Of a stretch of DNA of 50,485 bases, positions 13,386-48,811 are shown piece by piece (the first letter of the stretch is position 1; every line of letters begins with the position of its first letter). The position numbers and the translations under genes are program-made. The DNA comes from Macrostomum lignano (Eukaryota): the NCBI GenBank assembly GCA_002269645.1, contig NIVC01004325.1, positions 1-50,485 of the forward strand, given 5' to 3'. Below the pieces are notes generated by a model. That model saw only the letters and a list, made by a program, of their open reading frames with translations. It did no database searches and was not told the origin of the DNA.

Positions 13386-13424
13386 CTGCGGGAGCAAAAT
13401 ATTCAAGAGGGGCTTATAGGCGCT

Positions 13425-14530: not shown

Positions 14531-14601
14531 TAATCAACGGAGCTCAGTGAGTAAAGCACATACAACCTTCATGCATAAATAAAGCAGACAGTGAGACGCA
14601 C

Positions 14602-27250: not shown

Positions 27251-27310
27251 GGGTAAACAGCAAGAGTAACTATTACTACTGCTTCATAGGAAAGTGACTC
27301 GTCACCTTAT
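27251..27310 (+). other. Diverged 28S rRNA helix-69 fragment (transposon-borne remnant)
   Basis: GGGTAAACAGCAAGAGTAACTATTACT...GACTCGTCA resembles the copy at 27474. Confidence 0.6.
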
Positions 27311-27399
27311 TAGTCAAATGATTTTGAGTTTACTATTAAGTTTCATTGCATTGGACATTATATGTGCATATAAGCATGTATGTACATGAATACAATGGC

Positions 27400-27635
27400 T
27401 GTACAATTTACTTATTAATCGAAAAAAGCAACTTAACTATGAAAAAAGCATAGACAAAGTTAACGTTATGTTTGGGTAAACGGCGGGAGTAACTATGACT
27501 GTATAATGAGGGCTAAATGGCAAATGCCTCGTCAGCTAATGAGTACTACTTTTGAAATGTTTTGAATGTGCATTTTTGCAGCTTACCTTGGCTGGGCCCC
27601 TTGCCAGCCAGCTAGATCGGCTTGGTGTTACATCT
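27400..27635 (+). mobile_element. Diverged MITE copy carrying a 28S rRNA fragment (27474-27544)
   Basis: 27-nt exact match to 28S GGGTAAACGGCGGGAGTAACTATGACT, then a 20-nt replacement, then 22/24 match CAAATGCCTCGTCAGCTAATGAGT. Flanks are homologous to the reverse complement of 40207-40505. Confidence 0.8.
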
Positions 27636-28458
27636 GGATGATCTATATAAGGACAAAACAGGCTTAATTATGGTGTAAGAATTAAAATTCTCAATATAGC
27701 ATATTTTTTATTTTGAGAATAAAAAAAAACTATTAGTTATATTTTTCAAAGGACTAATGCAAAATAATCTACAAGAAAAATGCTAAAAATGACATATAAA
27801 GAATGAAAATCCATTGAATAGTTCAAAAGTTATGTAACTTATTAGTCAAAAAAATGCTTCTTTTTGCAAAAATGATCACAGTGGCTTATGGGAAAAATAC
27901 ATTACGGAGACAACAAAATATATGGCACTAAAAGTGCTATAACTTTTTTATTACTTGACCAAAATTCAAAAGTGAGGTGTCATTTTGCTCATATAACTAA
28001 GATCTAACAAATGGTATAGAAATAATTCTGAATTTAGAAGTTTTAAAATCTCACTGGACTCCCTAGTAATAATATAAAAATTGTTAAATTATAGCTAGGC
28101 CAAAAGTAGCAGCAGGTTACTCAACTCTTAAAGCAGAGAAAGTCATATTAATAGCACCTAACTGACTAATCAGTAACAGCAGAATTTGAATTTAGGAATT
28201 GAAATGAAATTTACTGTTGATTTGATTATGAATTGATGGATATAATGGATCATACAAAATATTGAATAGTAATCTAATACCATACAATTGACCGACACTG
28301 AATAAAGACAGATTCCTAAACAGTTAAAAAGATAATGATAGGATCCGAAGAGTAGTAGATATAATTTAATATATGATGAGGAACGACCACAGCATAAGTG
28401 TAGTGCAATAATGACCGGATTTTCAGTTCCACGTTCAGTTCCACGAAAATAAATAAAC

Positions 28459-29598
28459 AAAAAATCAAATGCATACTACAGTAAGGAAAATCTTTTTAAA
28501 ATTAAACTAATAGCATTTTTGCAATATAACATCTGAGTAGACCTTACACAAAAATATCTTTTCAATTGAACATCTGTGAGCTTCGTGGCACACCTCGAAT
28601 GCTGAAATGGAGTGAATTTTCTTTAGAATTTACGACGTAGATGGTGACTGTACAAAAAAATCAAATGCATACTACAGCAAGGAAAATCTTTTTAAAATTA
28701 AACTAAAAGCATTTTTGCAATATAACATCTGAGTAGACTTTACACCAAAAATATCTTTTCAATTGAACATCTGTGAGCTTCGTGGCACACCTCGAATGCT
28801 GAAATGGAGTGAATTTTCTTTAGAATTTACGACGTAGATGGTGACTGTACAAAAAAATCAAATGCATACTACAGCAAGGAAAATCTTTTTAAAATTAAAC
28901 TAAAAGCATTTTTGCAATATAACATCTGAGTAGACTTTACACCAAAAATATCTTTTCAATTGAACATCTGTGAGCTTCGTGGCACACCTCGAATGCTGAA
29001 ATGGAGTGAATTTTCTTTAGAATTTACGACGTAGATGGTGACTGTACAAAAAAATCAAATGCATACTACAGCAAGGAAAATCTTTTTAAAATTAAACTAA
29101 AAGCATTTTTGCAATATAACATCTGAGTAGACTTTACACCAAAAATATCTTTTCAATTGAACATCTGTGAGCTTCGTGGCACACCTCGAATGCTGAAATG
29201 GAGTGAATTTTCTTTAGAATTTACGACGTAGATGGTGACTGTACAAAAAAATCAAATGCATACTACGGCAAGGAAAATCTTTTTAAAATTAAACTAAAAG
29301 TATTTTTGCAATATAACATCTGAGTAGACTTTACACCAAAAATATCTTTTCAATTGAACATCTGTGAGCTTCGTGGCACACCTCGAATGCTGAAATGGAG
29401 TGAATTTTCTTTAGAATTTACGACGTAGATGGTGACTGTACAAAAAAATCAAATGCATACTACAGCAAGGAAAATCTTTTTAAAATTAAACTAAAAGCAT
29501 TTTTGCAATATAACATCTGAGTAGACCTTACACAAAAAATATCTTTTCAATTGAACATCTGTGAGCTTCGTGGCACACCTCGAATGCTGAAATGGAGA
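28459..29598. repeat. 197-bp tandem repeat, ~5.8 near-identical copies
   Basis: TCAAATGCATAC recurs at 28465, 28661, 28858, 29055, 29252 and 29449. Confidence 0.96.
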
Positions 29599-29599
29599 G

Positions 29600-29880
29600 A
29601 TTTCTTCCTGCTTTTTTATCTGTTGTGGAGACGCATCGTTCGCCACAGCGGCAAAAAACACCTGAGCTTGTTTGGCAACGCTGGCGACCTCAGCCTCTTT
29701 TTCTCGTCTGTTGAAAGCACAGAAAGAGGTGGGTTCAAGCGTTGACAGCATATTGAAGACCGAGATGCTGACTGTGTCTGCTGACGTATCAGCGGACCTG
29801 ACATGCCACGACGCAGACGCACGCTGCCAGCAGTGGTTCATCACATCAGCGGTCTGGTGCTCCGTGGAGAAAAAACCTTT
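29600..29880 (+). mobile_element. Older RTE-like LINE fragment related to 30560-30900
   Basis: Shares GACGCATCG..., GCTGACTGTG...GCGGACCTGACATG...GCGGTCTGGTGC blocks with the adjacent LINE copy. Confidence 0.6.
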
Positions 29881-30479
29881 CATATGAGGAGCCAGGCCCG
29901 AACCCATTGATCAATCCAAACTAGATGTACACGTATAGCTGTTCTACGTGTTCTCTATACACTACATGTACTTTTTGCAATCTGAACCGTATGTCATCAC
30001 AGCCTTAAAAGATCCCCTGATAAAAATCCGTCTGTATGATCCCGGAGTTCTCGATTTGTGCCCAAGCAGATTCCTATCAGCTATTCGGCTGCATGCTGCT
30101 CACCGCTAGCTCCAACCCTTTGATACCCATCCCAGGCGGGGGCTCCGGCCTCGCCAGGTCTGGTCATACCGTAGATCCAGGTTCGCCAGGTCACAGAGTG
30201 GTGGCAGCCAGTGGGTCATGCAATAACCCAATGATCAATATTTGCACCTTAGCTATCGATGGGGCACATTTGGGTCCTTACCGCGTCTCTAATATAGCAC
30301 TACCAAAAAGTTATCAATATGCATGGGCGGGACAACCTGAAGGGCGATCTGTCGGTCATAGTCTAGTCATAGACGGCTGGCAGCCATCCATAGTCATACG
30401 ATCTGATCCTTCCCCCATGAGAAGACGGTTCACTAGTAGGGCGATTACATACATGTAAATCATCATCAGTTCGACACTT

Positions 30480-31430
30480 CATCAGGAGTTCTGCATGGCG
30501 ACACTTTGGCGCCGTTTCTCTTCGTGCTGCTGCCACTGGGTGCTTCGGACCGCAGTCTCCTCGGCTAACGACGGCTTCCTGCGCTGCGCAGACGCATCGG
30601 TCGCCGCCACGGCGAAAAGCGCCTTATTATTATTTGCTTGGCTACGCCAACGAACTCGCCCTCCTGTCCTCGTCCGTTCAAGGTGGCATCCCGCCAGATC
30701 GACAGGTTGGTCAAGGTGGCATTGAGCGTCGGACTGGTTGTCAACACGCTAAAGACCTAGGTGCTGACTGTGCCGGCCGACATCCCAGCGCTAGCGGACC
30801 TGACATGTCGCCTCGCAGACGGGCAGATGACCACGCTCGCGCGCACGCTACCAGCGGGATCACCTACTCGGCGGTCTGGTGCCTCACGTGGACGGACCTC
30901 GATCCGGCGGCGCCGAGGACTTGCCTGGGCGGCCTTCCGTTCGATCCGAGCCGACGTCCAGTCCGAAGCGCTGCCCGACCGCCAGAGGGCTCGTCGGCTG
31001 TGGCAGGCGGTGTGCTCTACAACGCCGAGACGTGGACACTGACGGCTACGCTTAGAGCGGCAGCTGGACTCGGCGCATTCAGGGCTGCTCCGTGCGACCT
31101 TTCGAGCTGATGAGAGCGTCGGGACTGAGGCCCTGTACGATCGGGCCAAGCTGCAGCGCCCGTCCACCATCCTGCGCCGGCGGCGACTTCAACTGGCGGG
31201 CCACGTACGTGATCCGGGCCGAGGGCTACTGCCCCCAACCTGTTCAGGACGTCCTAGCCCTGTTGCTCACTCTGCAGGGCCCGCTCAGGCGGGGTCAGGC
31301 CCAAACCCGTCGATACGTGGACTGCCTCCTACGTACGCGACGCCAGGGCGCCCGACACTGCCAACGGGGCGGACTTCCTCCGCTCTCAGGCTCTGCGGCG
31401 CGCCATCTGAAGCACCCTGCTCTGTGACTT
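30480..31430 (+). mobile_element. 5'-truncated, frameshifted RTE-clade LINE (RT C-terminal region)
   Basis: Across frames: LGYANELALL (degenerate YADD), GLVVNTLKT, VLYNAETWTLT, RQLDSAH..LLR, ILRRRRLQLAGH, all typical RTE ORF2 motifs. Confidence 0.85.
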
Positions 31431-31897
31431 TGATTGCTAGCTGCATAATTTGTTGTTAAGTTGTTGCTGTTATGAGCTATTAACTTTTACTGTGTATATA
31501 TTTTTTATTCATTTAAGTAAAACAATTAGTTGAAACAAGTTATACTTCATGTAGTCCCAGGTAATTTTTTTATAGTCTTAAGAGTAACTAAAAACTAAAA
31601 CAAAGTTCATCTACGCGTAAATATTTAATACCATCATTATAGAGTGACAGTTTTGCTCAGCAAAAGACATTTAAGCATGACTTTTAATGCTTATATTTTA
31701 TTTTTATGAGGTTAAATTTTCAAAGAAAGTGCAGATAAATTAAATATCTTTTTTAATTATATAATTATATATACATGTAAGTAAAATTATAATTATAATT
31801 ATAATTATAATATGTAATTAATATTATAATTTTATATTAAAATATAATATAATTATAAATTTATATTGAAGAGAGGGTGTGTAAGGAAACTTTCGTT

Positions 31898-32085
31898 CAG
31901 TAGTGCAACCAGAAATTTTATGAGGGGCGGATTCTGGAGGGTAAAGTCCCGGGAGGTGGGGCGGACGGGGTGGCTCTGTTTTGGCGAAAATTCGCTTGGT
32001 CCCCCTTTGATTCTTTGATTTTTTGGGTCTCCGCGCCTATAAGAGGGGGGCGACCGCCCCCCGCCCCCACCTGGTTGCGCCACTG
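31898..32085. mobile_element. Second copy of the 189-bp CAGTGGCG MITE, inverted
   Basis: Reverse complement of 24877-25065 with TIRs CAGTAGTGCAACCAG / CTGGTTGCGCCACTG; no clear TSD. Confidence 0.88.
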
Positions 32086-33809
32086 CCTTTGCCTTAGTGT
32101 ATTCTCATTCAAAGCACTTCGAAAGCAATGTGCTTTTGAATTTCGTGTGGATAAGTTTCATATGCGCGCTAAAATGACTGACGAAAAAAGTACAATAAAA
32201 TGTAAAACTATCATAAAAAAATATAATTTAAATATTTATTGCAATGGCAATGCTTTTTTATTTGATGTTTAAGTGAAATTGGAGCAGAAATGTTTTTACT
32301 TTGTTTATACACTAACTATTTAGAGGCAATCCGGAGTGAATTAATTTAAATTTCGGAACTGAACCGAGAACCGAAAATCCGGTCATAGTGCAATAGAAAA
32401 ATGAAAATCAACTTCGACAAACATTTAAATTTTATCCTTATTTAAATATATATACATATCTTTATAACAAAATAATTTAAAAAAGTATTATCTCGTTTTC
32501 TAAATATGTTATATACCTAATATTTGCAAGTAAAAATCTTTTACAAAAACAAAGACTTCAACTTACTACACTATCTTAAGAAAAAACTTAAAAAAGGCGC
32601 CGGTGGAATTTATCGGCGAAAATTTGCCCGTCAAGAAGCTCTATTATGAATGCATACCTTTAATGTCCATGAATATAAATTTAATAAAAGATGTTTTACG
32701 TGCTTAGTCAGATTAAAACATGTTTACAACAAAAATTGTTCGAATTCAGTTTGTCGTTAAATTTTTGCATGTACGCGACTTCGACTTGCCAATTTAGTAC
32801 ACGTATCGTCAAATTTTCCTAGGTATGGTAACGGGAAATTCAAATCGAATGCAAATGTACTTAATACATTACTTAACACTTAACACAGTATAATCTACCG
32901 ACAAATAGAATCTACTGATTGGTCTGCCTAAGTTTCTTTCCCAGAAAGTCGGCTAAAATACATGAACATGTATGCAGAACCAGTAGCGGAAGGGTGGGGA
33001 ATAGGAGGGTAATGTAGAGTCCTCTCCGAACAGCCCGACAAAACATTTGGCAATATGCATTTGCTCTCAAGCGCACTTCATCTATATCTCCAGAGAAAAT
33101 TTATTGTTCAGAGCATGCTCTAACTTACATGTACTATACATGCACACTGCATACCAAATACGAGCTTTAGTGCATAACGATATCACATTGTAAAAAAGAT
33201 AAAAACTCAGGAGCTCTAATTTCGCATATTTTTGACAAAAAATCCAACATTAAATTTAAATTACTCATAGCAGTAGTAGTTTTAGACAATTAATTTGCAT
33301 ATATTACTATAGTTTTGACACAAACAAATAAAAAATATTGAACGCGAAAGAGAATAAAGATGACAATGGAATTCATATCAAATATCCTCCAAAAACGTAC
33401 TCATTTAGCACCAGTATAACTGTCATACTAAGGAGAAAACCGATAAAACCTATTTAGCACAATTTTTAACACAGAGAACCGAAATGAGTTACAAAGCATC
33501 TAGCTGATTGCATATTTTAGACTTTTCATAGCTTTTTTATAACGATAAATTTGTCTAGGACACAGGTCGGTGGCGTTAACAAGCCACGAATATTGATTGT
33601 TTGCCCGCAAAATTGGAGTACTCCCAAAGATCATATATATACACAAAGAGAATCAAAGAGAATACGCTCATATAAGATCTATGGAGTACACTAAATGAAG
33701 GATGTCGGACATCTCTAGATGTAGGATGCTAGGCGCTGAGCTATTCTTAATGAATGATGCTTAAATTGGCACACTAGTAGTTTAATAGTTATTATTAGCC
33801 AATTAAGCT

Positions 33810-34214
33810 TCAAAGCAACGAAGTGAGCCCAGAGAAGGGCAGTACAGTTGACAACAGATTAAGCACAACAGACCAGGCAATGGCGTGATAGAAACTAAAA
33901 AAACTGTGCCCCAACAGACTCGCGGAATAATACACGAATGCTAAGCACAGGCCGCTGATAGCGTGACTAGGCAAACTGTAAAGAAATCCCACAATAAATA
34001 GCAGAGGGAAAACTTTGCCAATCCGATGCAGACGCAGGTAAACAGCCGATACAACTAAAGCGCCAAGGTGTAGCACAAGCGATAATCCCATAGTCCACAG
34101 GAATATGGTAAGCCAGATATGCTGGTAGTCGTCGCCAACATCGACTGCTTCAGGCGAATCAGATGTCGGATCGACTGTTGCCGGGGAAATAGTCAGCTCA
34201 CTGGAGTTGTCCGT
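33810..34214 (-). CDS. TMEM170: TMEM170-family membrane protein, last (main) coding exon; start codon must lie in an upstream exon
   Basis: HIWLTIFLWTMGLSLVLHLGALVVSAVYLRLHRIGKVF matches the TMEM170 pattern (W..VFLW......H..A......LR.H..G). Three hydrophobic helices. Acceptor aacccgcag| at 34215, alternative AG at 34232. The ORF-track start at 34277 is TTG and probably intronic. Confidence 0.85.
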   Translation of the reverse strand, partial: TDNSSELTISPATVDPTSDSPEAVDVGDDYQHIWLTIFLWTMGLSLVLHLGALVVSAVYLRLHRIGKVFPLLFIVGFLYSLPSHAISGLCLAFVYYSASLLGHSFFSFYHAIAWSVVLNLLSTVLPFSGLTSLL

Positions 34215-34276
34215 CTGCGGGTTGGCGAGAGCTTTATTAATTATTAATAGAATACCAATGCCTAGAGGCCTAGACA

Positions 34277-34975
34277 ATGGAGAAGAAAGATAAAGAGCGA
34301 CTGAGAGCTTTTGACATAAATAATAACAGAAGAATGCTGGGCATTTCCTGGAAGGAGAAGAAGACTAACAGAAGGATTCAGGGCACTTCCTGGAAGGAGA
34401 AGAAGACTAACAGAAGGATTCTGGGAATTTCCTGGAAGGAGAAGAAGACTAACAGAAGGATTCAGGGCACTTCCTGGAAGGAGAAGAAGACTAACAGAAG
34501 GATTCTGGGAATTTCCTGGAAGGAGAAGAAGACTAACAGAAGGATTCTGGGAATTTCCTGGAAGGAGAAGAAGACTAACAGAAGGATTCTAGGCATTTCC
34601 TGGAAGGAGAAGAAGACTAACAGAAGGATGCTGGGCATTTCCTGGAAGGAGAAGAAGACTAACAGAAGGATGCTGGGCATTTCCTGGAAGGAGAAGAAGA
34701 CTAACAGAAGGATGCTGGGCATTTCCTGGAAGGAGAAGAAGACTAACAGAAGGATGCTGGGCATTTCCTGGAAGGAGAAGAAGACTAACAGAAGGATGCT
34801 GGGCATTTCCTGGAAGGAGAAGACAAACAGAAGATACTGGGCATTTCCTGGAAGGAGAAGACTAACAGAAGATACTGGGCATTTCCTGGAAGGAGAAGAA
34901 GACTAACAGAAGGATGCTGGGCATTTCCTGGAAGGAGAAGAAGACTAACAGAAGGATGCTGGGCATCTCCTGGAA
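34277..34975 (+). repeat. 42-bp minisatellite derived from an RTE LINE coding motif (RRMLGISWKEKKTN), ~15 copies, TMEM170 intron
   Basis: A unique lead-in KERLRAFD.. precedes the tandem in-frame unit RRMLGISWKEKKTN. Confidence 0.9.
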
Positions 34976-35504
34976 GGAGGAGAAAATGTTTGAAATGTGA
35001 TGCAGTGCTGAGGCACAAGGCCACAAGCCACAGATGTGGGATGTTCGTACTTTCCTAGAAAGCCCGCATACTTTTCTTCCTATATAACAAGACAGGTTCA
35101 ATTATGAGTAACAAATGACAAACACAGAGTTCTCGATTTTGCAGTTTTAGAATGCGATTCAACCAAAAAATCGACAATTATAAGGGATTTATTAGACTCA
35201 GACTGTCTTCCGCGCTTTGAAACGGAGAAAAAATAATATATATTGGCTAAATCCCCCAAAACCAAAGCATCACGGCAACAAAAAACCAGACGGAGTGGTT
35301 TATTTAAAAAACAAAGTGGGCAGAAAAATACACACGGAGCATTCCACAACGCCCAAGGGAAGCGGTAATACAAGAAGAGGAGGAAAACGGTTCAGGCCAG
35401 TACGTGGGTTACAGCAGCAAAACAAATTTAAATTATTTTTATTTGGACACCGAGACAAAATCTGACGGGCGAGACAAAATCTGAAGCTTGCCGTTATGAA
35501 AAAC

Positions 35505-35940
35505 TGAGGATTTGAGAGGCTTGCTCGGCTACTAAGAATCTGGGAGGCTGGCCCAGCAACTGAGGATCTGGCAGGCTGGACGAGCAACTGAGGATCTGGG
35601 AGGCTGGACGAGCAACTGAGGATCTGGGAGGCTGGACGAGCAACTGAGGATCTGGGAGGCTGGACGAGCAACTGAGGATCTGGGAGGCTGGCCCAGCAAC
35701 TGAGGATCTGGGAGGCTGGCCCAGCAACTGAGGATCTGGGAGGCTGGCCTAGCAACTGAGAAACTGGGAGGCTGGATCAGGAACTGAGGATCTGGGAGGC
35801 TGGCCTAGCAACTGAGGATCTGGGAGGCTGGATCAGGAACTGAGGATCTGGGAGGCTGGCCTAGCAACTGAGGATATGGGAGGCTGGATCAGCAACTGAG
35901 GATCTGGGAGGCTGGCCTAGCAACTGAGGATCTGGGAGGG
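35505..35940. repeat. 28-bp GAGGATCTGGGAGGCTGG minisatellite (third array of this family)
   Basis: Same unit and orientation as 6905-7360. Confidence 0.95.
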
Positions 35941-37029
35941 TGGTGACCTAGCGACTGTGAATCTGACAATGATAAGTCCAATATTGTCCGTCAAATTTAA
36001 TTGGACCCAGACACCAAGGCATTCACAAAAAACAAGGCAATATTCGGACCAGAATAAAGTCAAACTGAAAACTAGCGAACGAATTTGAAACAAGAAAGGC
36101 AGGCTGGGAGACAGACAAACAGACAGCTAAAAAGCGAAAAAAACGACAAATCGTTTTGAATTACTGACAGACAGATGACACAGCGCTAATGACAATCAGC
36201 TTATTTAAAAGGGTATTCGTTTGTCAAAAGAAAAAAGTGTATTAATTTTTTTCAGAATAAAAAACTTCTTAGAGATTGGTTGGTTGGCACAGTCGTGGGG
36301 AGTTCGATGGATGTTGTTGCGCGCCATCTAAAAAGGGAGGTCAGCTCTGTAGAGACGAGATCACAAATAAGTAGAAAAATAATTAAGGCTCAGCAGAAAC
36401 CATCTGTTAGCGCAGTTATAGTTATTGAAATGATAACACAAAAAAGGTTGTTGTTACTGCGAAAAAGCAACAAAAAATTAAGCAATTACAACATTGAAAT
36501 TATTTCACACAGCAATTGAACTGTACAGTTTTGATTAAATATTCTCGCACAGATTTTTAATAAGGCAGATACAGAGAGAATATCTAAATGTGCTATAACC
36601 CGGGGCATATAGAATTATTTGTTGCATTGTATTATAGACACTAGAGTACAGTCTGCAGTTTTTTTAAAGCAAATAATATCATCCACCCACTGCAAAATGG
36701 CTAAGCTAAATTATATTCCAATAACTCTTGTTGACAGAAACTATAAACCATTTCCTATTCAATAAGTTATTATCTATAAACAAAAATAAGCAATGCAAAA
36801 ACAGCCAAAGAAGCGCAAAGCAACTACGAGGCAAGAGCCAAACTAAAAAATAAGGAGAAAATGACAACACTTATAGTTTTATAATTATTTTTAGAGGCAA
36901 AAGAACTATTAACATTAGTTGGCAAATATAGCGACACATTCGTAACATTTTTGTTTTCAGATTTGAATAGTTTAAAAATATATTGCTTTTTAAATATGGC
37001 TGGTCAATAAGAATCAAGATTGGGGCAGG

Positions 37030-37265: not shown

Positions 37266-37543
37266 CGGGAACCAGATCCAGAAAAGGAACAGAGGCGGCT
37301 AACCAAATAACAGACAGACCAGCAAAAACCATTTAAAAGTAGACTTTACTGGAAGACCAGTTAGTACAATTCAAATTGCTTCAGCCGCTTAACAATGCCA
37401 AAAAATGATGACAGACTAATCGTCGACATACATACACCGCCGATGCACATAGACAAACAAAAATTGAAACTTTTAGTGTTAAAAACGTTAAAACTTCGAC
37501 CAATTTAGTCCACGCGTCTTCGCTATCCTATAACGTTGTTAAT

Positions 37544-37900: not shown

Positions 37901-38064
37901 TTTTGTGATAAAATTTGATTAAAGTTGATTTGACTGTTTAGAGGAAGATTTTAAATTTAGTTTCAGTTGTGATCAATACAGCCGGGAAGCCCTTATTGCT
38001 GAAATGGGGGGTGTATTGGATAACAAAACAGTACACATCCTTCTGTCATGAGCAGAATCTAATA

Positions 38065-38340
38065 GAATAATAAAAAATAAAAAATACTTAATTACACCTG
38101 CCCCAATTGCAAATGTGCAACAGACAGCTCAGCAGGAGCTATTGCACATCAGAATTTGAAGGCTGCATATGGCTGTTCAGTCCAAGGCCTGGGGGTCGCC
38201 ACCACAAACCCTTAATTACGAGTATCCCAGCTAATGCTGGCACCCATTTTATAGCTGGGTGAACTGAAGCAATGCAGAGTTAAGTGTCTTGCTCAAAGAC
38301 ACAAACTACTATAAGTAGGTCAAGAGTTGAATCCCTAAAC
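38065..38340 (-). mobile_element. Second copy of the CORE-like tRNA SINE
   Basis: The reverse complement matches 6520-6790 (TTGAGCAAGACACTTAACTCTGCA...ATGGGTGCCAGCATTAGCTGGG...TTGGACTGAACAGC). Confidence 0.85.
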
Positions 38341-38958
38341 TTTTGAAGCTAGGCTACAACCCATTTTAGACTACAACCCAAATGCTAAAAGTATAAACAT
38401 GAGTCTAAAATCAGGATGTGAAATTGAAAAACAATTGCCAGCTGGCATCAGTCATAAAGTTAAAAAAAAACAATCATCTTTATTTTACCCTCTATGGCTT
38501 GCCAGTATCTATCTATATGTGATTGACTTAATAAAAATGGCTCAACCAATTTTCATGAAACTTATACCATTTGATCAGAAATTTTCCTATAATAGTACAT
38601 TTTTTATAGCCACAATACAAAAAGGACAAATCCCAGGTCTGACAATAACCCAAGGATTTTGAAACCACTGAATTCCAATTCCAGGAACTATTTTTGCATA
38701 GATTCTTAAATTTGAAATTGTGCTCAAACAAAAAATTGTTAATAGTTAGCAAAAAGGCAAACAAAAAATTGGAGTAAATGCATGTTAAATTAAGATTTGA
38801 GGCCTTTGAAACTTATTTCCTCTCCTCAATCTTCTTGTCCATTTCCTCTTTTTCTTTTTTCTCATCTCTTATCCTTCCTCTCTCTTCTTCTTTTTTCTTT
38901 CCTCTCTCTACTCTATACTATTATCTCTCCTATCATCTTTCTCCATTCTACTCTTAAA

Positions 38959-39601
38959 TAGTGTTCCGCCGTAGCCATAGCTACGGCTACAGGATCCTAC
39001 GGCAAATATGGTAAAATAGGTGCCTATGGCAGTTATGGATACACCTACGGTAGCTAGCTGCTCTTATGGCTACAACTATGGAAATATGGTAGTTGCTGTC
39101 ACATTCTGTAGATTGCCGTAGCCGTAGTTATTAATGTTAAAAAAAAAAAAAAAAATTAGAAACAGGTAGAGTAAAACAAAGATACTTTCAGTAAACTGTA
39201 TTATCAACCTAGAAACTTAAAAAATATACCTAAAAAGTACAATAAAACACTAGCAAACTCTGATTTTTATTAATGTGAAAAAGTTTAGCATTAGTACTTT
39301 CAGTAACGATTAAGTACTGTTGCTCTGAAAAAAAGATGAAATATAATCTTACAAAGGCAATTGAGTGTTTCTTTTATTTTCTAATTTAATTTGCAGTTGT
39401 TTTAGCACTAGGTTATCATATTGATTCAAAATATTCTATGTTTTAGACTTTTGTTAAAAGTAGGGCTACAGCTATGGGAACTATGGGAATATGGTAATTT
39501 TGGGGTCCCCACGGCTACGGAATATGGAGAATTGGAATAAGCCATAGTTTTGCTTTTGGCTATGGCTACGGTACATGGACCCTCCTTATGGTGGAACACT
39601 A
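38959..39601 (+). mobile_element. 643-bp hAT-type MITE inserted in a CT-rich tract
   Basis: TIR TAGTGTTCCGCC / GGTGGAACACTA; TSD CTCTTAAA / CTCTTCAA (7/8). Confidence 0.85.
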
Positions 39602-40206
39602 CTCTTCAATCTTATTTCTCTTCTCTAATCTATCATCTTTCCTCTTTTCTCTTATATCCTCTTTATTCTCTCTTCTCTTATCTACTCTCTCTTTTCCTTT
39701 CTCCTCTTCTTTATGCTCTTTTGTGTCTCCTCTCTTTTCTTTTCTGATCTAGTCTATCACCTCCTCTCTCTTCTTATCTCTTCTTTTCTCTCATCTCTCT
39801 CCTTGTTTAGTTTTTTTCTACTCTTCTATCTTTTCTTTCAATGCATTTCTTGCCTTTCCTCTGTTGGTTCATATCTAATTTAAAATTAATCAACTATTCT
39901 CCTTTAAAATGAGAAAATTACTTCAAAATTACTGCTAAACTGAATCAAGTTATTGAATTGCTAATCTAGAAATGCCAGAAAAAAATGCTAGAAAAATAAT
40001 AACATTAGAAAAATATAGAAAAAATAAAGCAGGAAACGAAAAAGCCAAACCAAATGATTGACCAATTCCAATTTAATATATCTTTAAGGCTTAAAAACTT
40101 TTATAATAGACAAAATAATAAAACTGACAGATAACCAGATTTTTCATAAATATGAATAGACAAAAAGGTGGCTTCAAAATGTAACAAATGAAATCAGTAA
40201 TAAATA

Positions 40207-40505
40207 CATACATGCGCAACAGTCGGCCGAGTCGGCCGATCCAGCCAACCGATTTGGCGGCCAACCAAGAAAGTCGCAAAAATGCCCACCCGAAAAAATA
40301 ATCAAGTAGTAGTACTAAGTAGCTGACGAGGCATTTTGGCTTAATAGGACAGTCATAGTTACTTCTGCCGTTTACCCAAAGTTGCGTTAATTTTGCTTTA
40401 GGGTTTTTTTTACATGTAAGTCGCATTTTTGGCCAAAAACTACGTCGCATTTTTGTTAAAACTAAGTCGCATGGCCGACCGAATTTCAGAGGTTGCGCAT
40501 GTATG
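40207..40505 (-). mobile_element. 299-bp MITE (TIR CATACATGCGCAAC, 8-bp TSD) carrying a 28S rRNA fragment at 40314-40377
   Basis: Perfect 14-bp TIRs; perfect TSD AATAAATA; 51/64 ungapped identity to the recalled 28S segment. Confidence 0.92.
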
Positions 40506-40929
40506 AATAAATATAAGTAATAGCTTTAAAAATTTAGTTATTTCAATATAGATTAAAGATATAGGCTATTTACCTAAAGTATCTCAGGTAAGTAAGGAAA
40601 AAAAGGCCTAACACAATTGATTTAAATAGTTATATGAGAATATTTCAAAATTTATATTTCTGGTGCTGTTTTCTATTCTATAGAATTTGTTTCTAGCAAA
40701 AAATGAGAAATTTATAATTTAGGAAATAGCATTTAAAAACAAAAATTCTCTGAAGAAATGTAGAAGGGCCTATGTTTATTCCTAGAAAATTAGTATGTTT
40801 CCGCGAAATTAAATTCCCGCCAAAATAACAAGTACTGTATGATTTGTTTTAATTCGTAAATTTGTTTTACTGAATAATATTTTGTTTTAATGATGCGAAT
40901 AATTTGTTTTAGCTATTCATTTGTTTTAA

Positions 40930-41042
40930 TGTTAGATACATAAGCCAATGAAACAAGACTCTAACTAGTATAAATACAAGGCCAAAATAAAACGAAACCT
41001 CGAACTCGACCTCGACCTTTCGGGTTCCTAACTCAGTTAACA
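40930..41042 (+). mobile_element. Possible short LTR (113 bp)
   Basis: TGTTA...TAACA termini enclosing CCAAT, TATAAATA and AATAAA in order; no second LTR, PBS or TSD seen. Confidence 0.3.
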
Positions 41043-43799
41043 GGAAATTAAGATTTCTTGGTTCTTCTGAATTAGTCATTTGAAGCAGTATTGCAGACTA
41101 AGTTACCGTGTTGGATAGCAAGAGTGTTTTGCTAGTACAGTGATAGGCAGGGATTGCCAGTAAAGAGGATGGAATACCCAGTGTAAAGGGTGGAATACCC
41201 AGTAAGAAGGGTGGAATACCCAGTAAAAAGGGTGGAAATACCCAGTGAAGAAAGTAAATAGTCCAGGCTGTTGCAGCTAAGCGTGATGCAGCTCTAAGTC
41301 GTGAGAGACAGTAATAAAGGAAGCCGGAAACCCCTCGATCTGAGGTAAATGCCGTGTTTGGACTATAGAATACGAGTTTAGCAGTAGTTAGCAGTGTCTT
41401 GCCACTCGGGCACTGAAGCTACCAGGGGTAATTCGTAGCAACGATAGCCCATAAAGTATAAAAGTACATGTAAGTGTAAGAATTAAATTCTAGGAAAATA
41501 GTAAAAATCCAGTGTAGTTTAGTGCAACTAGGTAAGAAATTATAAGGCCTATAGCAACTTGGTAATATCTAGTAGAATTAGGGAAGATAGAGGTAACAGG
41601 CCTGCTACAACTTGGTGACAAAACGGTGGGATTTTGAATAGGCAGAAGGATCCCCTGCAACAACTTGGTGTCAACAGTGGGATATTTTAAATAAGTAAAA
41701 GGGCGCTGCAACAGAAATATGAGGCTACATGATATTTTAGCAAAGTAATATTTTGGCAAATCACAAAAAAATGTTTAGGCAAAGTATTGTAATATTCCAA
41801 TTAATTAAAAAAATAATATAGGCTAGACTATACAAAAGAATGATCTCTTGATTACAATATTTTTAATAACCTTTCCCATAAAATTAAGGACCTACAAAAG
41901 ACAGAATAATTTAGTCAATCTGTCTTCAAATGCAGAAACAATGCAGAATTCAAATAAATACACTGCACTATTTTTTTGGCTTGAAGCATGCAAATTTGAA
42001 CTTAGGCCTTAGTAGCTGCAGTATTGGCATATAGCTATCTATTTTGAAAATAGCCCCCATTTCAAAAGTAGCAAAAAGGAAACAAAAAGAGTTAAAATAA
42101 AAAAGGAAACAGCTCACTCTTAGGGCCTAGAAATAAAAAAGTAGGCCTAATGATAAAGACAAAGTAACAAAGCAGCAAAATTAACAAATACTATAGAAAC
42201 AAAATTGAAGAATACAATTGAAATTAAAAAAGATCTCAAAAACAGAATGTGCCAAAACATTACTAGTGGAAACGAAACTTCGCCAAAACGTCTCATAGCT
42301 AAATGTGAGACTATTTATTTACTAGGCCCTATCAGTCTATCACTTCTTGACTTTACATTACAATAAATTATATCAGGCTAGGGGCCTGACAAAGCCGGCT
42401 AAAATTACAATCTAATGAAGCAATAAAATATATAACATATAACATCTACTGCCAAAGTACAAAAGGTTCCTGGCTTGATGAAACATCACACACATTAAAT
42501 AACTTACTTCTAATGGACGATCGCAGTTTTAAGCGAAAATATAACTCAATACAGCTATTTACAAGAAACTTAACTGTTCAAATTTGTGTTTCAAACGTCA
42601 ACAAGAAAATATTCTTTATTCATAATAACTTTTAATATTTGATTAATTTATACTTAAAAAAGTAAACAATAAAGCAAATTTTAGCCTACTATCAATCATA
42701 AACTTAAAGTTGTTAGACACATATTGTTTAAGCTGTTATCAGCAACCTCAAAAAGCTGACTAAACTTGCCTATTTTCAATTTACCCGAAACAAGCTTAAA
42801 CTATAGATTGAATCGATGACGATAGCTGACATTTGTGCTCTTTCTAAAAGTTCTTGTCAAGTAAAGCAAGCTAGTGAGCTCTCAAGTTTATATTTACATT
42901 GCGCATATTGTTGCGCATTATTTACAAATGTTTAAATCAATTTCAACTTAACGCGTGCTCGCATGTAATTAACTTAACTTTATCAGCATCAGCAATAATT
43001 AATAAACTTCGCATTGGTTTAAGGAAAATATCATTTATATTAATCCTAAGTTAGTACATGTTGTTTGTACTGAAAACTTAAGAAATTAGCTAAGTTTTTT
43101 ATAGTTAAATTGAATTGTAATCACTTGGTCTAATATATTCATCTGGGACATCTGGCAATTTCTAAAATTGTGTAGATTCTTCAAGATGTAAGTTTTTATT
43201 ACATTTTGCTTGGTATTTTTGTCTTTTGAAGTTTTAAAATTTGTGATATTTATTCTTATTAGAAAGATTTTGTGTTTATATAGTAGAGTATGCACTTTGA
43301 AATTGCACATCAAAATTGAAAATTTTGAGTATAGTTTAGGTAGGGTCTCATAACTACTGATTTTCCTTTTATAAGGCTTAAGCATTATTTAATAGGCCTA
43401 AGAGAAATTACATTTTGAAACCTAAATTGTAGCTTAAAATTAGGCATAAGATACAATTTCCAAAATTTTATACCTTGTCTCTTGTAAAAATAAACCTAAT
43501 TGACAAAGGAATGTCTAGAGGAGTGTCTAGAAGATCAATCAAAGGAATGTCCATAATAGGGAGCAATAACAACTAAAGGGCAATATCTTAAACTTAAATT
43601 TTCATTGAAAAATATTTTAAAAATGATTTTTAACTCTTTGTTAAGTTGTTTTTTTGTAATTTAAAGGTTTTTAAATAGAAAGCTAAATAAACTTTAACAT
43701 GAATACATTTAATTGCTTATTTATTTTATTTAGCAGATCTCTATCAAAAAACTTTTGGTTATTTAGATTCAAAATATTTGATATATTTATTTTTGTATT

Positions 43800-44560
43800 A
43801 TTATAAGAAAAGAGAAAAAGTAAAGAAAAGAAAAGAGAGAAAAAATAATAGAAGAAAGGAAAGAGGAAAAATAAAAGAAAAGAAAAGTGAAATTGGAAAT
43901 ATGAAAGGAAAACAGATGAGAGAATAAAGAAGAGAGATGTTAGAGTAGAAAGAATAGAAAAAAGAAGAAAGACAGGCAAAAAGAGAGAAGAGAGGGGAAA
44001 GATTATAGAGATGAGAGGAAAGAGAAAAATTGTGAGAGTAGAAAAGATAGACAATGGGAGAAAGCAGTAGAGTAAGGAGAAGAAATAAAAGGGAGAATTG
44101 AGAGGACAAGAAAAAGTAAAAAGAAAGAGAAAAGAAGAAAAGAGAGAAAGTTGAGTAAAGTTGGAAAAATTGAGAGGAGAATACAGCTTAGAGATAAGAG
44201 AGAAAAGATGAGACAGGAAAAAATAGATAGAAAAAGATTGAGATAAAAAAGAGAAAGTATAGAGATAATAGGAAAAATAAGAAATGAGAGCATAGAAATA
44301 GAAAAGAGAGAAGAGAGAAGTGTTGTGAGAGGAGAATGAAGAGTGAAAAGTGGGGAGAGAAGAAAGTAAAAAGCAAAGGAAAATAAAAAGAGAAGAGAAA
44401 GTGGAGAAAAAAGAAAGTAGAGAACAAAAATTAGAAAGGTGAAAGAAGAGACAAAAGAAGAGGAGAGAGAAAACAAGAAATAGGATTAGGAAAAAAGAGA
44501 AGAGAGAGAGAGAGAAAGAGGGAGAAACAGAAAAGAAGATAAGTTTCTAAGGATCTATCA
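43800..44560. repeat. ~760-bp degenerate purine (GA-rich) tract
   Basis: Almost exclusively A/G on the plus strand; the source of spurious F/L/S-rich ORFs. Confidence 0.9.
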
Positions 44561-45097
44561 TAGAAAGAAGCAGAGACAAGAGGTCAGAGTTTGCTAATAT
44601 ATGTTTTCAAAAAACATTGCCTGATATTCTGTGCAATATCCCAGCTAATGAGATCAGTGCTTACTTAAAATATTATTTTTGGACAATTTTTTTCATTTTA
44701 TTTTTATGTCTATCTTAACTATTAACAAGTCTTTTGTTTGAATATGATTTCAGATTTTGAATACATACAGAAATTGTTCCTGGGGACCTGGGATTAGAAT
44801 TCCACAGGTTCAAAATCTGTGGGTTTCAATGGCTTGTGCTTGTACAGAAACTAGTTTGTTTCTAGAATTAAAACTCTAAAAAAGGAAAATAATGTTTCAA
44901 AATATTTCTTTGGAAACTCCAAAGTAAAAATACTAAAAGTAGGAGGCCATATAGGAACCTGTGGCCTAACAGGGAACAGGGGGGGGGGGCTTAGCCTTTC
45001 TCCCTCCCTAGGGCCCATTAGACACCATTCCCAATTGGTTCTAACTAATTTGGTAACAGAGATTGACATGCCATAGTCAAGAAGGTGTCTAGTATAC

Positions 45098-45379
45098 ACC
45101 CTGATTGCAGCGCATGGGCATTTTGGCGGACGGCGTCCGGCGCGGATCTAATACAGCGCGGCGCGGCGCGTACGACGAGCAGCGATTAGTACGGCGCGGC
45201 GCGGTACTAATTAGATGCCGAGGCATTTACGCTTGATAAGACAGTCATAGTTACTCCTGCCGTTTACCCAAAACTGCGTTAATTTTGCTTTAGGGTTTCT
45301 TTCACAGGTAAGTCATTTCACAGCGTGGCGCAGGTTGTGTAGGCGTCTGGCGTACTTAAGCCATGCGCTGCAATAGGGG
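45098..45379 (-). mobile_element. ~280-bp MITE with a different TIR (CCCTGATTGCAGCGCATGG / CCATGCGCTGCAATAGGGG) carrying a 28S rRNA fragment at 45199-45269
   Basis: Imperfect ~18-bp TIRs at a GTATAC/TATAC site; 58/71 ungapped identity to the recalled 28S segment. Confidence 0.85.
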
Positions 45380-46443
45380 TATACACTAGAGTTTTCTATC
45401 CCAAGTATGTCAAAAAATTGGAAATGTACATAAAAAATTCTATACAAAATGTGCAACCTCGGTTCTTATAATAATGGACCTTTTTTGTTGCAACAATAAA
45501 AATTCTTTTTTGCATTGCAACATTTGGTAGTTTGCATATGCAATATAACAAAATGAATATTATGTCTATTTCGCATTTATGACAACTTGCCATTGCAGAA
45601 AATTTTGATACCTTATTTCTTTAGAATAATATTATTGCATTTAATTAAGATTTTTGTATTTTGTTGGCACTCCCTTTATCTCTTAACCACAACCTTTTTT
45701 CCAAAATATACTATTTTTTACCAAAATACCAAATAAAGCTAAGTAAATTTTAGGCAAATATTTCTAATAAAGCTAGCATTTTTCTTTGCTATGGGCATTT
45801 GACATTTGATATATTAATATGCTAGGTAGTTATTCAAATACAAAACATTGTTTTTTATAATAAATGTCAATTCAATTATTAATTTAATATTCTTATAGTT
45901 ATGAAGCCCAATTTTGATAATCTGAGTTCCTCCAACTAGCTTTAGCTTTAGGTTAGTTAGAACCCTATAAGGCTTCAATTTATATGTATTAAGGATCTTC
46001 TTAGTTCAATATTCCTGTCTTAAAACTACTTGTAATTTAAACTACAGATACTAGAATACCCCTAGAGATTGACCACTATAGTTTATACTCAGCAAAACAG
46101 CTTTCTACTTTCAGTTCAATAGCAATGAAAAATACATAAGCTATTTTATATGAATAAAGGCAGCTGACTTTGATAAGTTTAGAATCATAAGCTTGCAAGT
46201 GTAAACAACTTGCCATAATGTACATAAGCCACTGACATGAACATGGTAGATTTAGGCTGGAATGACTGATAAATTAATCAAAAACTATAGATACAGATGT
46301 CTATAACACTAGAGAAATTAGAAGAGGCATTTAGAAAAAAAATTAATTGGCTGTCCCACTTACAAGTTACATATTCAACTAGTTCTATAAATCTTTATAT
46401 GCAAATCTGTTAGATTTCTGAGTTTTGCTGTTGAACCTATATC

Positions 46444-46654
46444 CATACATGCGCAACCCCCTGATCTACACTGGCCATGCAACTTACTTTTTTTACCAAA
46501 AATGCAACTTACCTGTGAAAGAAACCCTAGAGCAACATTAATACAATTTGGGAAAACGGCAGGAGTAACTATGACTCTCTTATAATTTTTGCGACTTACC
46601 CCTGGTCCACCACAATTTACGGTGGCCAGATTGGCCAGCAGTTGCGCATGTATG
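46444..46654 (+). mobile_element. 211-bp MITE (TIR CATACATGCGCAAC, 8-bp TSD) with a truncated 28S fragment at 46550-46582
   Basis: Perfect TIRs; perfect TSD CCTATATC; 31/33 match to 28S ending at CTCTCTTA. Confidence 0.92.

Positions 46655-46877: not shown

Positions 46878-48811
<1,934 letters not shown>

What the first reader, a model, noticed from the sequence alone, without database searches (positions are those of the whole stretch)
27251..46654. DNA-transposon MITEs carrying the 28S rRNA helix-69 / R2-target segment (five copies in 20 kb)
Seen: the module GGGTAAACGGC(G/A)GGAGTAACTATGACT...AAATGCCTCGTCA(T/G)CTAATTAGT occurs at 27251, 27474 (27/27 plus 22/24 match), 40314-40377 (51/64), 45199-45269 (58/71) and 46550-46582 (31/33). 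Two copies sit inside elements with perfect TIRs and perfect 8-bp TSDs, so the module moves as transposon cargo rather than as rDNA pseudogene debris. Established: this stretch is LSU helices 68-71 and holds the R2 retrotransposon, I-PpoI and Pokey target site. Inference: a high-copy cut-and-paste family that carries the most-targeted rDNA site. It could be passive capture, a decoy for rDNA endonucleases, a homology guide for rDNA targeting, or a source of anti-28S small RNAs. I know of no description of this combination.
Basis: partly seen in the sequence, partly recalled or inferred. Interest (0 to 1): 0.9.

Follow-up and report, generated by a model that had tools for sequence, protein, structure and literature searches.

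The report
Flatworm MITEs carrying a 28S fragment
A family of small cut-and-paste transposons in the flatworm Macrostomum lignano carries a roughly 65-base copy of the large-subunit rRNA gene; it has demonstrably moved, but the rRNA piece is most likely captured cargo whose nuclease target site is already ruined.

Summary
The window is Macrostomum lignano contig NIVC01004325.1. It holds five copies of a 64-72 nt segment that is 77-94% identical to the 28S rRNA gene around the R2/I-PpoI/Pokey site. All five start at the same base, GGGTAAAC, and the full-length ones share a 3' end.

Three copies lie in 211-299 bp elements with terminal inverted repeats (TIRs) and perfect 8-bp target-site duplications (TSDs). 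A collinear paralogous locus shows transposition directly. The E40 site is empty there, and that locus has its own full-length copy where the window is empty. A relative with the same TIR lacks the module, so the module is cargo.

The interpretation needs correction in three ways.
- The nuclease site in the middle (CTCTTAAGGTAGCC) is degenerate in every copy; only the two flanking blocks are 28S-like.
- The H69 stem is broken without compensation.
- Individual insertions decay at the same rate inside and outside the blocks, so nothing suggests host-level selection.

The blocks are, however, the best-kept part between subfamilies. The 28S bases abutting the captured piece match the TIR at 11/14, which suggests capture through a surrogate transposon end.

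Closest known cases are Pokey/mPok and SINE28. A 2024 review lists no TIR transposon with a 28S coding fragment. Verdict: a new variant of a known kind, of moderate interest. The autonomous partner, genome-wide copy number and function are untested.

The parts
40207..40505 (-). E40. Full-length MITE of 299 bp. The 28S-like module is sense on the minus strand at 40314-40377. TIRs are at 40207-40220 and 40492-40505. TSD AATAAATA is at 40199-40206 and 40506-40513. Three to four subterminal TGCGACTTAC-type repeats are present.
   Evidence: The site is empty at the collinear position of paralogous locus L005, which has a single ATTGAATA there.
46444..46654 (+). E46. MITE of 211 bp with the same TIR as E40 (14/14). 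TSD CCTATATC is at 46436-46443 and 46655-46662. It keeps only the 5' half of the module (46550-46582, 31/33 to 28S, including CTCTTA). A deletion starts at the TTAA/R2 site.
45100..45378 (-). E45. Related element of 279 bp with different TIRs: CCTGATTGCAGCGCATGG versus CCCTATTGCAGCGCATGG, 16/18. TSD GTATACAC is at 45092-45099 and 45379-45386. It shares only the 111-bp core (the 45-nt 5' core plus the module at 45198-45269) with E40 and E46. Its 28S identity runs on to ..TTAGTACCGCGC. The right half is GC-rich.
   Evidence: (88% to E40 over 111 bp)
27375..27643 (+). E27b. Older, CpG-decayed copy with approximate boundaries and a possible TSD CATATAAG/TATATAAG. The module is at 27474-27544. Block 1 is 27/27 identical to 28S, including both CpGs, while the rest is only about 68% identical to the family consensus.
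   Evidence: Fisher p=2e-5
27251..27316 (+). E27a. The module alone (51/66 to 28S) with the same end points and the TTTT junction seen in the MITE copies. Its flanks have no significant similarity to the family.
21419..21590 (+). E21. Palindromic MITE of 172 bp with the same left TIR CATACATGCGCAAC and the GTAAGTCGC motif. TSD TCCAAATT is at 21411-21418 and 21591-21598. It has no 28S module, which shows the module is cargo of a sub-lineage.
   Evidence: fold z = -15; absent from L005
23230..28063 (.). A 4.83-kb non-coding TIR element (GGGAGTCCAGT...ACTGGACTCCC) with an 11-bp TSD TAGTAATAATA. It contains E27a and E27b and is absent from the paralogous locus L005.

Best explanation
These are miniature non-autonomous cut-and-paste DNA transposons (MITEs) of Macrostomum lignano.

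Structure:
- They are 170-305 bp long, with a 14-bp TIR CATACATGCGCAAC.
- They carry subterminal TGCGACTTAC-type repeats, presumably transposase binding sites.
- They make 8-bp target-site duplications.
- The transposase must come from an autonomous element that I did not find.

Origin of the module: one lineage acquired, once, a 64-72 bp piece of the 28S rRNA gene running from 36 nt upstream to about 31-38 nt downstream of the R2 cleavage site. It covers the H69 hairpin and part of the next hairpin. The piece has since spread as internal cargo and has been reshuffled among related subfamilies (the E40/E46/M5a type, the E45 type, and module-only contexts).

Likely capture route (inferred): the 28S bases that directly follow the captured piece, GACGCGCATGAATG, resemble the element's right end, GTTGCGCATGTATG, in the correct orientation. 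A transposase acting on an element sitting in or next to rDNA could have used this surrogate end and carried off the intervening 28S sequence.

After insertion the copies decay neutrally. The rDNA endonuclease site in the middle of the module is already destroyed, so the copies are not functional targets.

Shown: the 28S origin, TIR/TSD structure, mobility, cargo status, degenerate centre and neutral decay within a subfamily. Inferred: a single capture, the surrogate-end mechanism, and absence of function.
For: 28S origin:
- Copies are 77-94% identical over 33-72 nt to the printed 28S target, with identical 5' end points and a shared TTT junction.
- The Rfam LSU consensus confirms the segment.

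Transposon structure:
- Perfect 14-bp TIRs and perfect 8-bp TSDs in E40, E46 and E21; 8-bp TSDs also in E45 and M5a.

Mobility:
- The collinear paralogous locus L005 (82-93% identity) lacks E40 at a single-copy 8-mer.
- L005 carries its own full-length copy, M5a (88% to E40, TSD GGTAGTAG), where the window is empty.

Cargo status:
- E21 has the same TIR but no module.

Neutral decay:
- In E40, M5a, M5b and E46, mismatch rates inside the 28S blocks equal those outside.
- M5b has lost 8/27 of block 1.

Degenerate centre:
- Pairwise identity at the centre is 0.65, against 0.85 and 0.87 for the two blocks.

Surrogate end:
- 11/14 identity, directly abutting the module, in the right orientation. 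Only 82 of 20000 shuffled TIRs reach 11/14 anywhere in the 100-nt segment.
- E45 keeps 28S identity into ..ACCGCGC.

Density:
- 3 copies in 49.5 kb of non-window DNA.
Against: - Between subfamilies the two 28S-like blocks are the best conserved part of the elements: 0.85-0.87 against 0.56-0.74 elsewhere, TIR regions included. In E27b and E45 the blocks are far better kept than the rest (p=2e-5 and 4e-10).
- In E27a and the TIMELESS-intron copy only the module is recognisable. Purely passive cargo does not predict this. Modular reshuffling does, but so does a cis function.
- Present-day elements have about 100 nt between the module and the right TIR, so the surrogate-end model needs later rearrangement.
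- The host's own 28S sequence, the autonomous element and genome-wide copies could not be examined.
- The sample is only 8 independent copies.
Confidence: 0.72

Rival explanations
1. The two 28S-like blocks are a functional cis module of the transposon lineage. They might be an extra binding site for its transposase, a binding site for an rDNA-specific protein such as an R2-type protein (block 1 covers the R2 upstream recognition region), or a homology arm that biases insertion or repair towards rDNA. On this reading source elements retain them while everything else turns over.
For: - The blocks are the most conserved part between subfamilies.
- The module occurs with fixed end points in at least 3 flank contexts.
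- Block 2 starts with CCAAA(A)TGCC, which resembles the subterminal repeat CCAAAAATGCGAC (read).
- R2 elements exist in flatworms, and a fish R2 lineage has acquired a 28S-derived 3' UTR (PMC5035012).
Against: - E21 has the same TIR, lacks the module and still has a perfect 8-bp TSD, so the module is probably not needed for transposition.
- E46 transposed, or at least has perfect TIRs and TSD, with block 2 deleted.
- Within a subfamily there is no excess conservation.
- The sample is 8 copies.
- Reshuffling of a shared module explains the same pattern without any function.
Confidence: 0.15
2. Host-level role. The dispersed copies would act as decoys that titrate rDNA-specific endonucleases or retrotransposon proteins. 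Alternatively they would be templates for antisense or small RNAs against 28S rRNA.
For: - Estimated density of about one copy per 16 kb.
- Copies lie in both orientations inside transcribed regions. E45 (minus) and E46 (plus) lie within the annotated Ena/VASP gene range.
- Block 1 can be 27/27 identical to 28S.
Against: - Individual insertions decay neutrally (M5b block 1 is 19/27).
- The cleavage site is degenerate.
- The module is not part of a long hairpin: the fold z-score of module-bearing elements is only -3 to -6 and comes from the termini.
- No expression or small-RNA data were available.
Confidence: 0.04
3. The copies are rDNA pseudogene debris or dispersed rDNA fragments (orphons, or filler DNA at repaired breaks) that only happen to lie near inverted repeats.
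For: Two copies, E27a and the TIMELESS-intron copy, show no recognisable transposon flanks.
Against: - All copies have identical fragment end points.
- The TTT junction and the 45-nt non-rDNA core are shared.
- Whole elements with TSDs are present or absent between paralogous loci.
- No longer stretch of rDNA is present: Rfam finds no LSU hit in the window.
Confidence: 0.02
4. The elements act as intron or splice-site donors in an introner-like way. The strand antisense to 28S carries splice signals and can create or remodel introns.
For: - In three near-identical TIMELESS paralogues the only intron (1898 bp) begins GTGAGTGATTAGATGACGAGG. That is the antisense 28S sequence GTCACTAATTAGATGACGAGG with two changes.
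- My spliced model equals the annotated protein PAA84069.1 exactly.
- The antisense strand of E45 and E46 reads TTTCTTTCACAG|GTAAGT.
Against: - This is one independent case in 8 copies, and the chance of an intronic copy abutting a donor site is not negligible.
- GTAAGT is part of the repeated GTAAGTCGCA subterminal motif.
- The other copies are deep in introns or intergenic.
- No literature link between introners and flatworms was found.
Confidence: 0.04

Closest known systems
Pokey and mPok (piggyBac superfamily DNA transposon and its MITEs in Daphnia)
   Same: Both are a DNA transposon/MITE family linked to exactly this stretch of 28S. Pokey inserts at the TTAA of CTCTTAAGGTAGCCAAATG. Both carry rDNA-derived sequence internally and occur both dispersed in the genome and as short MITEs (PMC3849761; PMC10946416).
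   Different: Pokey makes TTAA duplications, whereas this family makes 8-bp TSDs. Pokey's cargo is IGS and ITS2 repeats, not the 28S target region. Pokey is known to reside in rDNA, which could not be tested here. No transposase is known for the M. lignano family.
SINE28 (mammalian SINE derived from 28S rRNA)
   Same: A mobile element whose body is a piece of the 28S rRNA gene (PMC4994717).
   Different: SINE28 derives from the 3' end of 28S. It is a Pol III-transcribed retroposon that is repeatedly re-derived, and it is low-copy (27 loci in human). Here the piece comes from domain IV (the H69 region) and sits inside a TIR/TSD cut-and-paste element. It appears to come from a single capture and is dense.
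Gene-fragment capture by non-autonomous DNA transposons (transduplication and modular reshuffling, e.g. Pack-MULEs); 5S-carrying SINE3, Cassandra and Ajax
   Same: A short host-gene fragment is embedded in a non-autonomous element and amplified with it. The 2024 review treats rDNA modules in TEs as products of reshuffling that mostly do not benefit the element.
   Different: In the 5S cases the captured part is a Pol III promoter with a clear benefit. No promoter or other function is evident for this 28S piece. The Pack-MULE comparison rests on my own knowledge and was not tested here.
Actinopterygian R2 lineage with a 28S-derived sequence in its 3' UTR
   Same: A mobile element that carries a copy of 28S sequence from near its own rDNA target (PMC5035012).
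   Different: That element is an autonomous non-LTR retrotransposon that still inserts in 28S. Here the carrier is a TIR element inserted throughout the genome.

Membership tests
MITE / non-autonomous TIR (class II) transposon | Terminal inverted repeats | tested here: met
   CATACATGCGCAAC is 14/14 at both ends of E40 and E46. The left end of E21 and the left end of M5a are also perfect. E45 is 16/18.
MITE / non-autonomous TIR (class II) transposon | Target-site duplication of constant length | tested here: met
   Perfect 8-bp TSDs: AATAAATA, CCTATATC, GTATACAC, TCCAAATT, GGTAGTAG.
MITE / non-autonomous TIR (class II) transposon | Short, non-coding, multiple dispersed copies | tested here: met
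   Elements are 172-304 bp. A protein search with the translated element found nothing. There are 8 independent module copies on 3 unrelated contigs.
MITE / non-autonomous TIR (class II) transposon | Evidence of transposition (filled versus empty sites) | tested here: met
   Reciprocal presence and absence of E40 and M5a between the window and collinear paralogous locus L005, with a single 8-mer at each empty site.
MITE / non-autonomous TIR (class II) transposon | Autonomous partner with the same TIRs that encodes a transposase | not testable with these tools
   No such element lies in the roughly 100 kb of M. lignano DNA I could reach. The genome cannot be searched by DNA with these tools.
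hAT superfamily | 8-bp TSD | tested here: met
   See the TSD row above.
hAT superfamily | TIR starting (C/T)A(G/A)NG and target consensus nTnnnnAn (from my own knowledge) | tested here: not met
   The TIR starts CATAC. Only GTATACAC of the 5 TSDs fits nTnnnnAn. I do not assign the family to hAT; P, Merlin and other 8-bp-TSD superfamilies remain possible.
Pokey-type rDNA-specific DNA transposon (piggyBac) | TTAA target duplication | tested here: not met
   TSDs are 8 bp and none is TTAA.
Pokey-type rDNA-specific DNA transposon (piggyBac) | Copies inserted at a specific 28S site | not testable with these tools
   No M. lignano rDNA unit was accessible.
rRNA-derived SINE (SINE28-like) | Retroposon hallmarks: no TIR, A-rich or simple-repeat tail, variable TSD | tested here: not met
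   The elements have TIRs, fixed 8-bp TSDs and no tail.
Intact R2 / I-PpoI / Pokey target site | Central sequence CTCTCTTAAGGTAGCC preserved | tested here: not met
   The centre reads GTCCTATTAAGCCA in E40, GTCTTATCAAGCGT in E45 and GTATAATGAGGGCTAAATGGC in E27b. It is deleted after CTCTTA in E46 and reads CTCTATTAAGATTGTC in the TIMELESS copy.
rRNA structural mimic (H69 hairpin) | Stem GGGAG(U)/(A)CUCUC kept or compensated | tested here: not met
   The Rfam consensus structure is shown. Most copies read ACTGTC, a C>G change in the 3' strand with no compensating change in the 5' strand.
Introner-like element | The element supplies splice sites and recurs at many intron ends | tested here: inconclusive
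   One independent case, TIMELESS intron 1. The other 7 copies are not at intron ends.

The most novel reading that the evidence does not exclude
The family descends from an rDNA-resident DNA transposon whose transposase recognises a TIR-like motif inside 28S (GACGCGCATGAATG, right next to the R2 site). That would be a second rDNA-targeting DNA transposon after Pokey. In addition, the two 28S-like blocks would be retained in source elements because they bind a protein (the transposase or an R2-type protein) or guide the element back to rDNA.
Probability: 0.12. Interest if true: 0.7.

Novelty: new variant of a known kind. Interest (0 to 1): 0.36.

Why it matters
Transposons that carry rDNA-derived pieces are known: 5S-promoter SINEs, Cassandra, SINE28 and Pokey's IGS repeats. 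A dense TIR-transposon family carrying the 28S domain-IV segment around the most heavily targeted rDNA site does not appear in the 2024 review of the field. M. lignano's published repeat annotation discarded short and unclassified repeats.

In practical terms, about 10^4-10^5 dispersed 28S-like 27-mers could confound rRNA depletion, rDNA read mapping, R2 or 28S PCR and FISH, and small-RNA annotation in this model flatworm. That count is a rough extrapolation from 3 copies in 49.5 kb.

In conceptual terms, the TIR-like motif next to the captured piece gives a concrete, testable route by which a cut-and-paste element can pick up flanking host DNA. The between-subfamily conservation of the two blocks leaves open a cis function that could link DNA transposons to rDNA biology.

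Tried and rejected
- **Rfam on the window.** No LSU or other credible hit at gathering thresholds, or on 27-47 kb at permissive E-values. The fragments are too short for the LSU model.
- **Protein search with the open frame spanning E40.** No candidate found, so ORF calls over other copies could not be used to harvest more copies.
- **MITE-specific DNA pattern.** 0 hits in viral contigs. The single hit in JGI metagenomes is a genuine protist LSU rRNA, not a MITE.
- **Does the 45-nt non-rDNA core 5' of the module also come from 28S?** No: local alignment to the Rfam consensus upstream is no better than shuffles.
- **rRNA structural mimicry.** Rejected because the H69 stem is broken.
- **Gene conversion from rDNA as the cause of block conservation.** Judged unlikely, because a conversion tract spanning both blocks would also restore the 14-nt centre, which stays diverged.
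- **Flank homology of E27a and the TIMELESS copy to the family.** Not significant.
- **Contigs NIVC01002879.1 and NIVC01001581.1.** They gave no empty-site information because they are 99.995-100% identical assembly overlaps of the window.
- **A more distant TIMELESS paralogue lacking the intron.** None in the cluster.
- **My spliced model of the 630-aa gene at 11859-14967.** It is not the annotated protein, so I could not extend the paralogous locus.
- **Search for an autonomous partner.** Neither the TIR scan of all held loci nor the Pfam scan of ORFs in 28-32 kb found one.

Full report
**Source of the window.** An exact look-up of the synaptobrevin gene at 18288-18665(-) places the window as the whole of contig NIVC01004325.1 of assembly GCA_002269645.1. 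NIVC00000000 is the Mlig_3_7 assembly of the flatworm Macrostomum lignano (PMC5730564).

Other genes in the window:
- TMEM170 at 33810-34211(-)
- a DUF2615/SMIM14 gene at 37544-37900(-)
- an Ena/VASP gene annotated from about 43186 to beyond 47900(+)

The window is rich in minisatellites.

**Check of the observation.** The two halves of the module are found exactly where stated, with none expected by chance in dinucleotide shuffles. I took the reference 28S sequence from printed R2 target oligonucleotides (PMC13000458; PMC4370867; an 84-mer in bioRxiv 10.1101/2024.11.11.623112). I also took it from the Rfam LSU_rRNA_eukarya consensus aligned to a genuine LSU contig.

| Copy | Coordinates | Identity to 28S |
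|---|---|---|
| E27a | 27251-27316 | 51/66 |
| E27b | 27474-27544 | 58/71 |
| E40 | 40314-40377 | 54/65 |
| E45 | 45198-45269 | 61/72 |
| E46 | 46550-46582 | 31/33 |

Every copy starts at the same base (GGGTAAAC). In the window copies this start is preceded by TTT rather than the GCGC of 28S. Every full-length copy ends at TTAGT(AC). The Rfam structure line shows that block 1 contains the H69 hairpin (GGGAGU/ACUCUC). It also shows that block 2 runs into the 5' strand and loop of the next hairpin.

**Anatomy of the elements.**
- E40 (40207-40505) and E46 (46444-46654) have perfect 14-bp TIRs, CATACATGCGCAAC. Their perfect 8-bp TSDs are AATAAATA and CCTATATC. They carry 3-4 direct subterminal repeats of the type (AAAAA)TGCGACTTAC.
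- E45 (45100-45378) has different TIRs (16/18) and TSD GTATACAC. It shares with E40 and E46 only a 111-bp core: 45 nt of non-rDNA sequence plus the module (88% identity).
- E27b is a CpG-decayed copy.
- E27a retains only the module.
- E21 (21419-21590, TSD TCCAAATT) has the same TIR and the GTAAGTCGC motif. It is a near-perfect 172-nt hairpin with no 28S module. The module is therefore cargo of a sub-lineage and is not part of the minimal element.

**Proof of mobility.** Cluster look-ups of the window's small proteins gave paralogues, and their loci could be fetched. L005 (contig NIVC01000073.1:498551-518952) is collinear with window 15.2-43.1 kb at 82-93% identity.

- At the E40 position L005 reads ...gaaatcact ATTGAATA taagtaatagc. 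That is one 8-mer and no element.
- L005 in turn has a full-length element, M5a (13633-13936, 88% to E40, TSD GGTAGTAG). The window there reads cttagGTGGCAAGccaagg, with no element.
- L005 also has a decayed copy, M5b (about 3860-4053).

So module-bearing elements transposed after the two paralogous loci diverged.

Two other contigs, NIVC01002879.1 and NIVC01001581.1, are 99.995-100% identical assembly overlaps of the window and add nothing.

A third unrelated region holds one more module. It is L004/L010 on contig NIVC01000390.1, with near-identical paralogues L007 and L008.

In total there are 3 copies in 49.5 kb of non-window unique DNA. Extrapolated to the 764-Mb assembly, this is of the order of 10^4-10^5 copies. 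That figure rests on three events and is only indicative.

**What the module is not.** The centre, CTCTTAAGGTAGCC, holds the R2 cleavage site, the Pokey TTAA and, from my own knowledge, the I-PpoI site. It is degenerate in all copies:
- small indels and substitutions in the E40/E45/M5 type
- a 7-nt longer scrambled version in E27b
- a deletion starting right after CTCTTA in E46
- 4/16 substitutions in the TIMELESS copy

The elements therefore do not carry a usable target site. The H69 stem is broken by ACTCTC>ACTGTC without compensation, so the module is not an rRNA structural mimic. The 45-nt core upstream of the module is not detectably 28S-derived.

**Conservation pattern.** Pairwise identity over six alignable copies:

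| Region | Pairwise identity |
|---|---|
| Block 1 | 0.85 |
| Block 2 | 0.87 |
| Centre | 0.65 |
| 45-nt core | 0.74 |
| Left flanking part (includes TIR) | 0.59 |
| Right flanking part (includes TIR) | 0.56 |

Split by copy, E40, M5a, M5b and E46 show the same mismatch rate inside and outside the blocks. The excess conservation comes entirely from E27b (2/50 against 47/149, p=2e-5) and E45 (2/50 against 98/202, p=4e-10). It also appears qualitatively in E27a and the TIMELESS copy, where only the module is recognisable.

I read this as follows. Individual insertions decay neutrally, so there is no host-level selection on each copy. Between source lineages the module is retained while the surrounding sequence is replaced. 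Modular reshuffling among non-autonomous elements explains this, and the 2024 review considers that the usual origin of rDNA modules in TEs. A cis function for the transposon would explain it too. I cannot separate the two with 8 copies.

**A clue to the capture mechanism.** The 28S bases directly after the captured piece, GACGCGCATGAATG, match the element's right end, GTTGCGCATGTATG, at 11/14 in the same orientation. Only 82 of 20000 composition-matched shuffled TIRs reach 11/14 anywhere on either strand of the 100-nt segment. E45 keeps 28S identity into ..TTAGTACCGCGC.

This suggests that a transposase once used this 28S motif as a surrogate right end of an element lying just upstream, mobilising the intervening 28S bases. 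Present elements have about 100 nt between the module and the TIR, so this step is an inference.

**Comparison with known systems.** The review of rDNA-TE associations (PMC10946416) lists:
- 5S-promoter SINEs
- Cassandra and Ajax
- SINE28
- Pokey/mPok, with IGS-derived repeats

It lists no TIR transposon with a 28S coding fragment.

- SINE28 derives from the 3' end of 28S and is a Pol III retroposon.
- Pokey inserts at the very TTAA inside this segment, makes TTAA duplications and carries IGS/ITS2 repeats.
- A fish R2 lineage carries a 28S-derived 3' UTR, and R2 occurs in flatworms, sometimes without target specificity.

The superfamily of the M. lignano family is unresolved. The 8-bp TSD fits hAT, P, Merlin and others, but the TIR (CATAC...) and the TSD sequences do not fit the hAT consensus.

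M. lignano's published repeat library dropped short (<200 bp) and unclassified models. This may explain why the family is undescribed. I could not query Repbase or Dfam.

**Verdict.** It overstates the case in two ways: the target site is not intact, and nothing points to a decoy, guide or small-RNA role.

This is a new variant of a known kind, a rDNA-derived module in a non-autonomous TE. Two features are worth following up on a whole genome: the between-subfamily conservation of the two blocks, and the TIR-like motif in 28S next to the captured piece.

Noticed in passing
L004 13947-14010 (also L007 13596-13658, L008 13951-14013, L010 10910-10971): A 28S-like module, antisense, sits exactly at the 5' end of the only intron (L004 13945-15842, 1898 bp) of a TIMELESS homologue. 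The intron starts GTGAGTGATTAGATGACGAGG, which is the antisense 28S sequence GTCACTAATTAGATGACGAGG with two changes that make a consensus donor site. My spliced model equals the annotated protein PAA84069.1. The flanks show no similarity to the MITEs. The centre of this copy is in register with 28S (TTAAG is kept).
   Followed up: partly
window 45282-45310 and 46500-46525 (strand antisense to 28S): The strand antisense to 28S of the conserved core reads TTTCTTTCACAG|GTAAGT. This is an acceptor-like tract followed directly by a consensus donor, the pattern of a recursive splice site. It overlaps the repeated subterminal motif GTAAGTCGCA, so it may be incidental.
   Followed up: no
window 22137-22716, and a solo end at 45071-45089: A different MITE family (E22) has TIR CCATAGTCAGGAAGGTGGC, an 8-bp TSD CAACCACT and internal GGCGCA(C/T) repeats. 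It is absent at the collinear site of L005. A solo copy of its TIR (17/19) lies immediately left of E45.
   Followed up: partly
window 23230-28063: A 4.83-kb non-coding element has 11-bp TIRs (GGGAGTCCAGT) and an 11-bp TSD TAGTAATAATA. It is absent from L005 and contains E27a and E27b. The long TSD suggests a Mutator-like element.
   Followed up: partly
window 28387-32403: This segment is absent from paralogous locus L005. It holds a 197-bp tandem repeat (28459-29597, 5.8 copies, 98% identical) and a GC-rich block (about 30.0-31.4 kb, GC 0.51) whose long ORFs have no Pfam match.
   Followed up: partly
window 6901-7359, 8161-10649, 35502-35943: The same 28-29-bp minisatellite unit (GGCCCAGTATCTGAGGACTCTGGGAGGCT type) forms three arrays, one of 86 copies. 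It gives long spurious ORFs of up to 532 aa. Many other minisatellites fill the window.
   Followed up: no
window 29227-47900 versus contigs NIVC01002879.1 and NIVC01001581.1 (L003, L006): There is assembly redundancy. Two other contigs of Mlig_3_7 overlap this window at 99.995-100% identity, differing for example by a 3-bp indel in TMEM170 (133 versus 134 aa).
   Followed up: yes
window 40091-40450 (-): One reading frame is open across the whole of E40, giving a 119-aa ORF that reads through the 28S-like module in sense. A protein search found no related sequence, so this is probably chance.
   Followed up: yes
L007 98-165 and about 245-330: A truncated left end of the MITE family (perfect TIR, then 52 nt at 83% to E40) is followed by a tRNA-derived SINE-like sequence with A and B boxes (TAGCTTAGTGG ... 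GGTTCGATTCC).
   Followed up: no
window 46550-46590: The internal deletion in E46 begins right after CTCTTA, at the TTAA/R2 position of the module. In the other copies the same few bases are the most scrambled part. Repeated cutting and error-prone repair at this site would produce that pattern, but it is equally compatible with chance.
   Followed up: no
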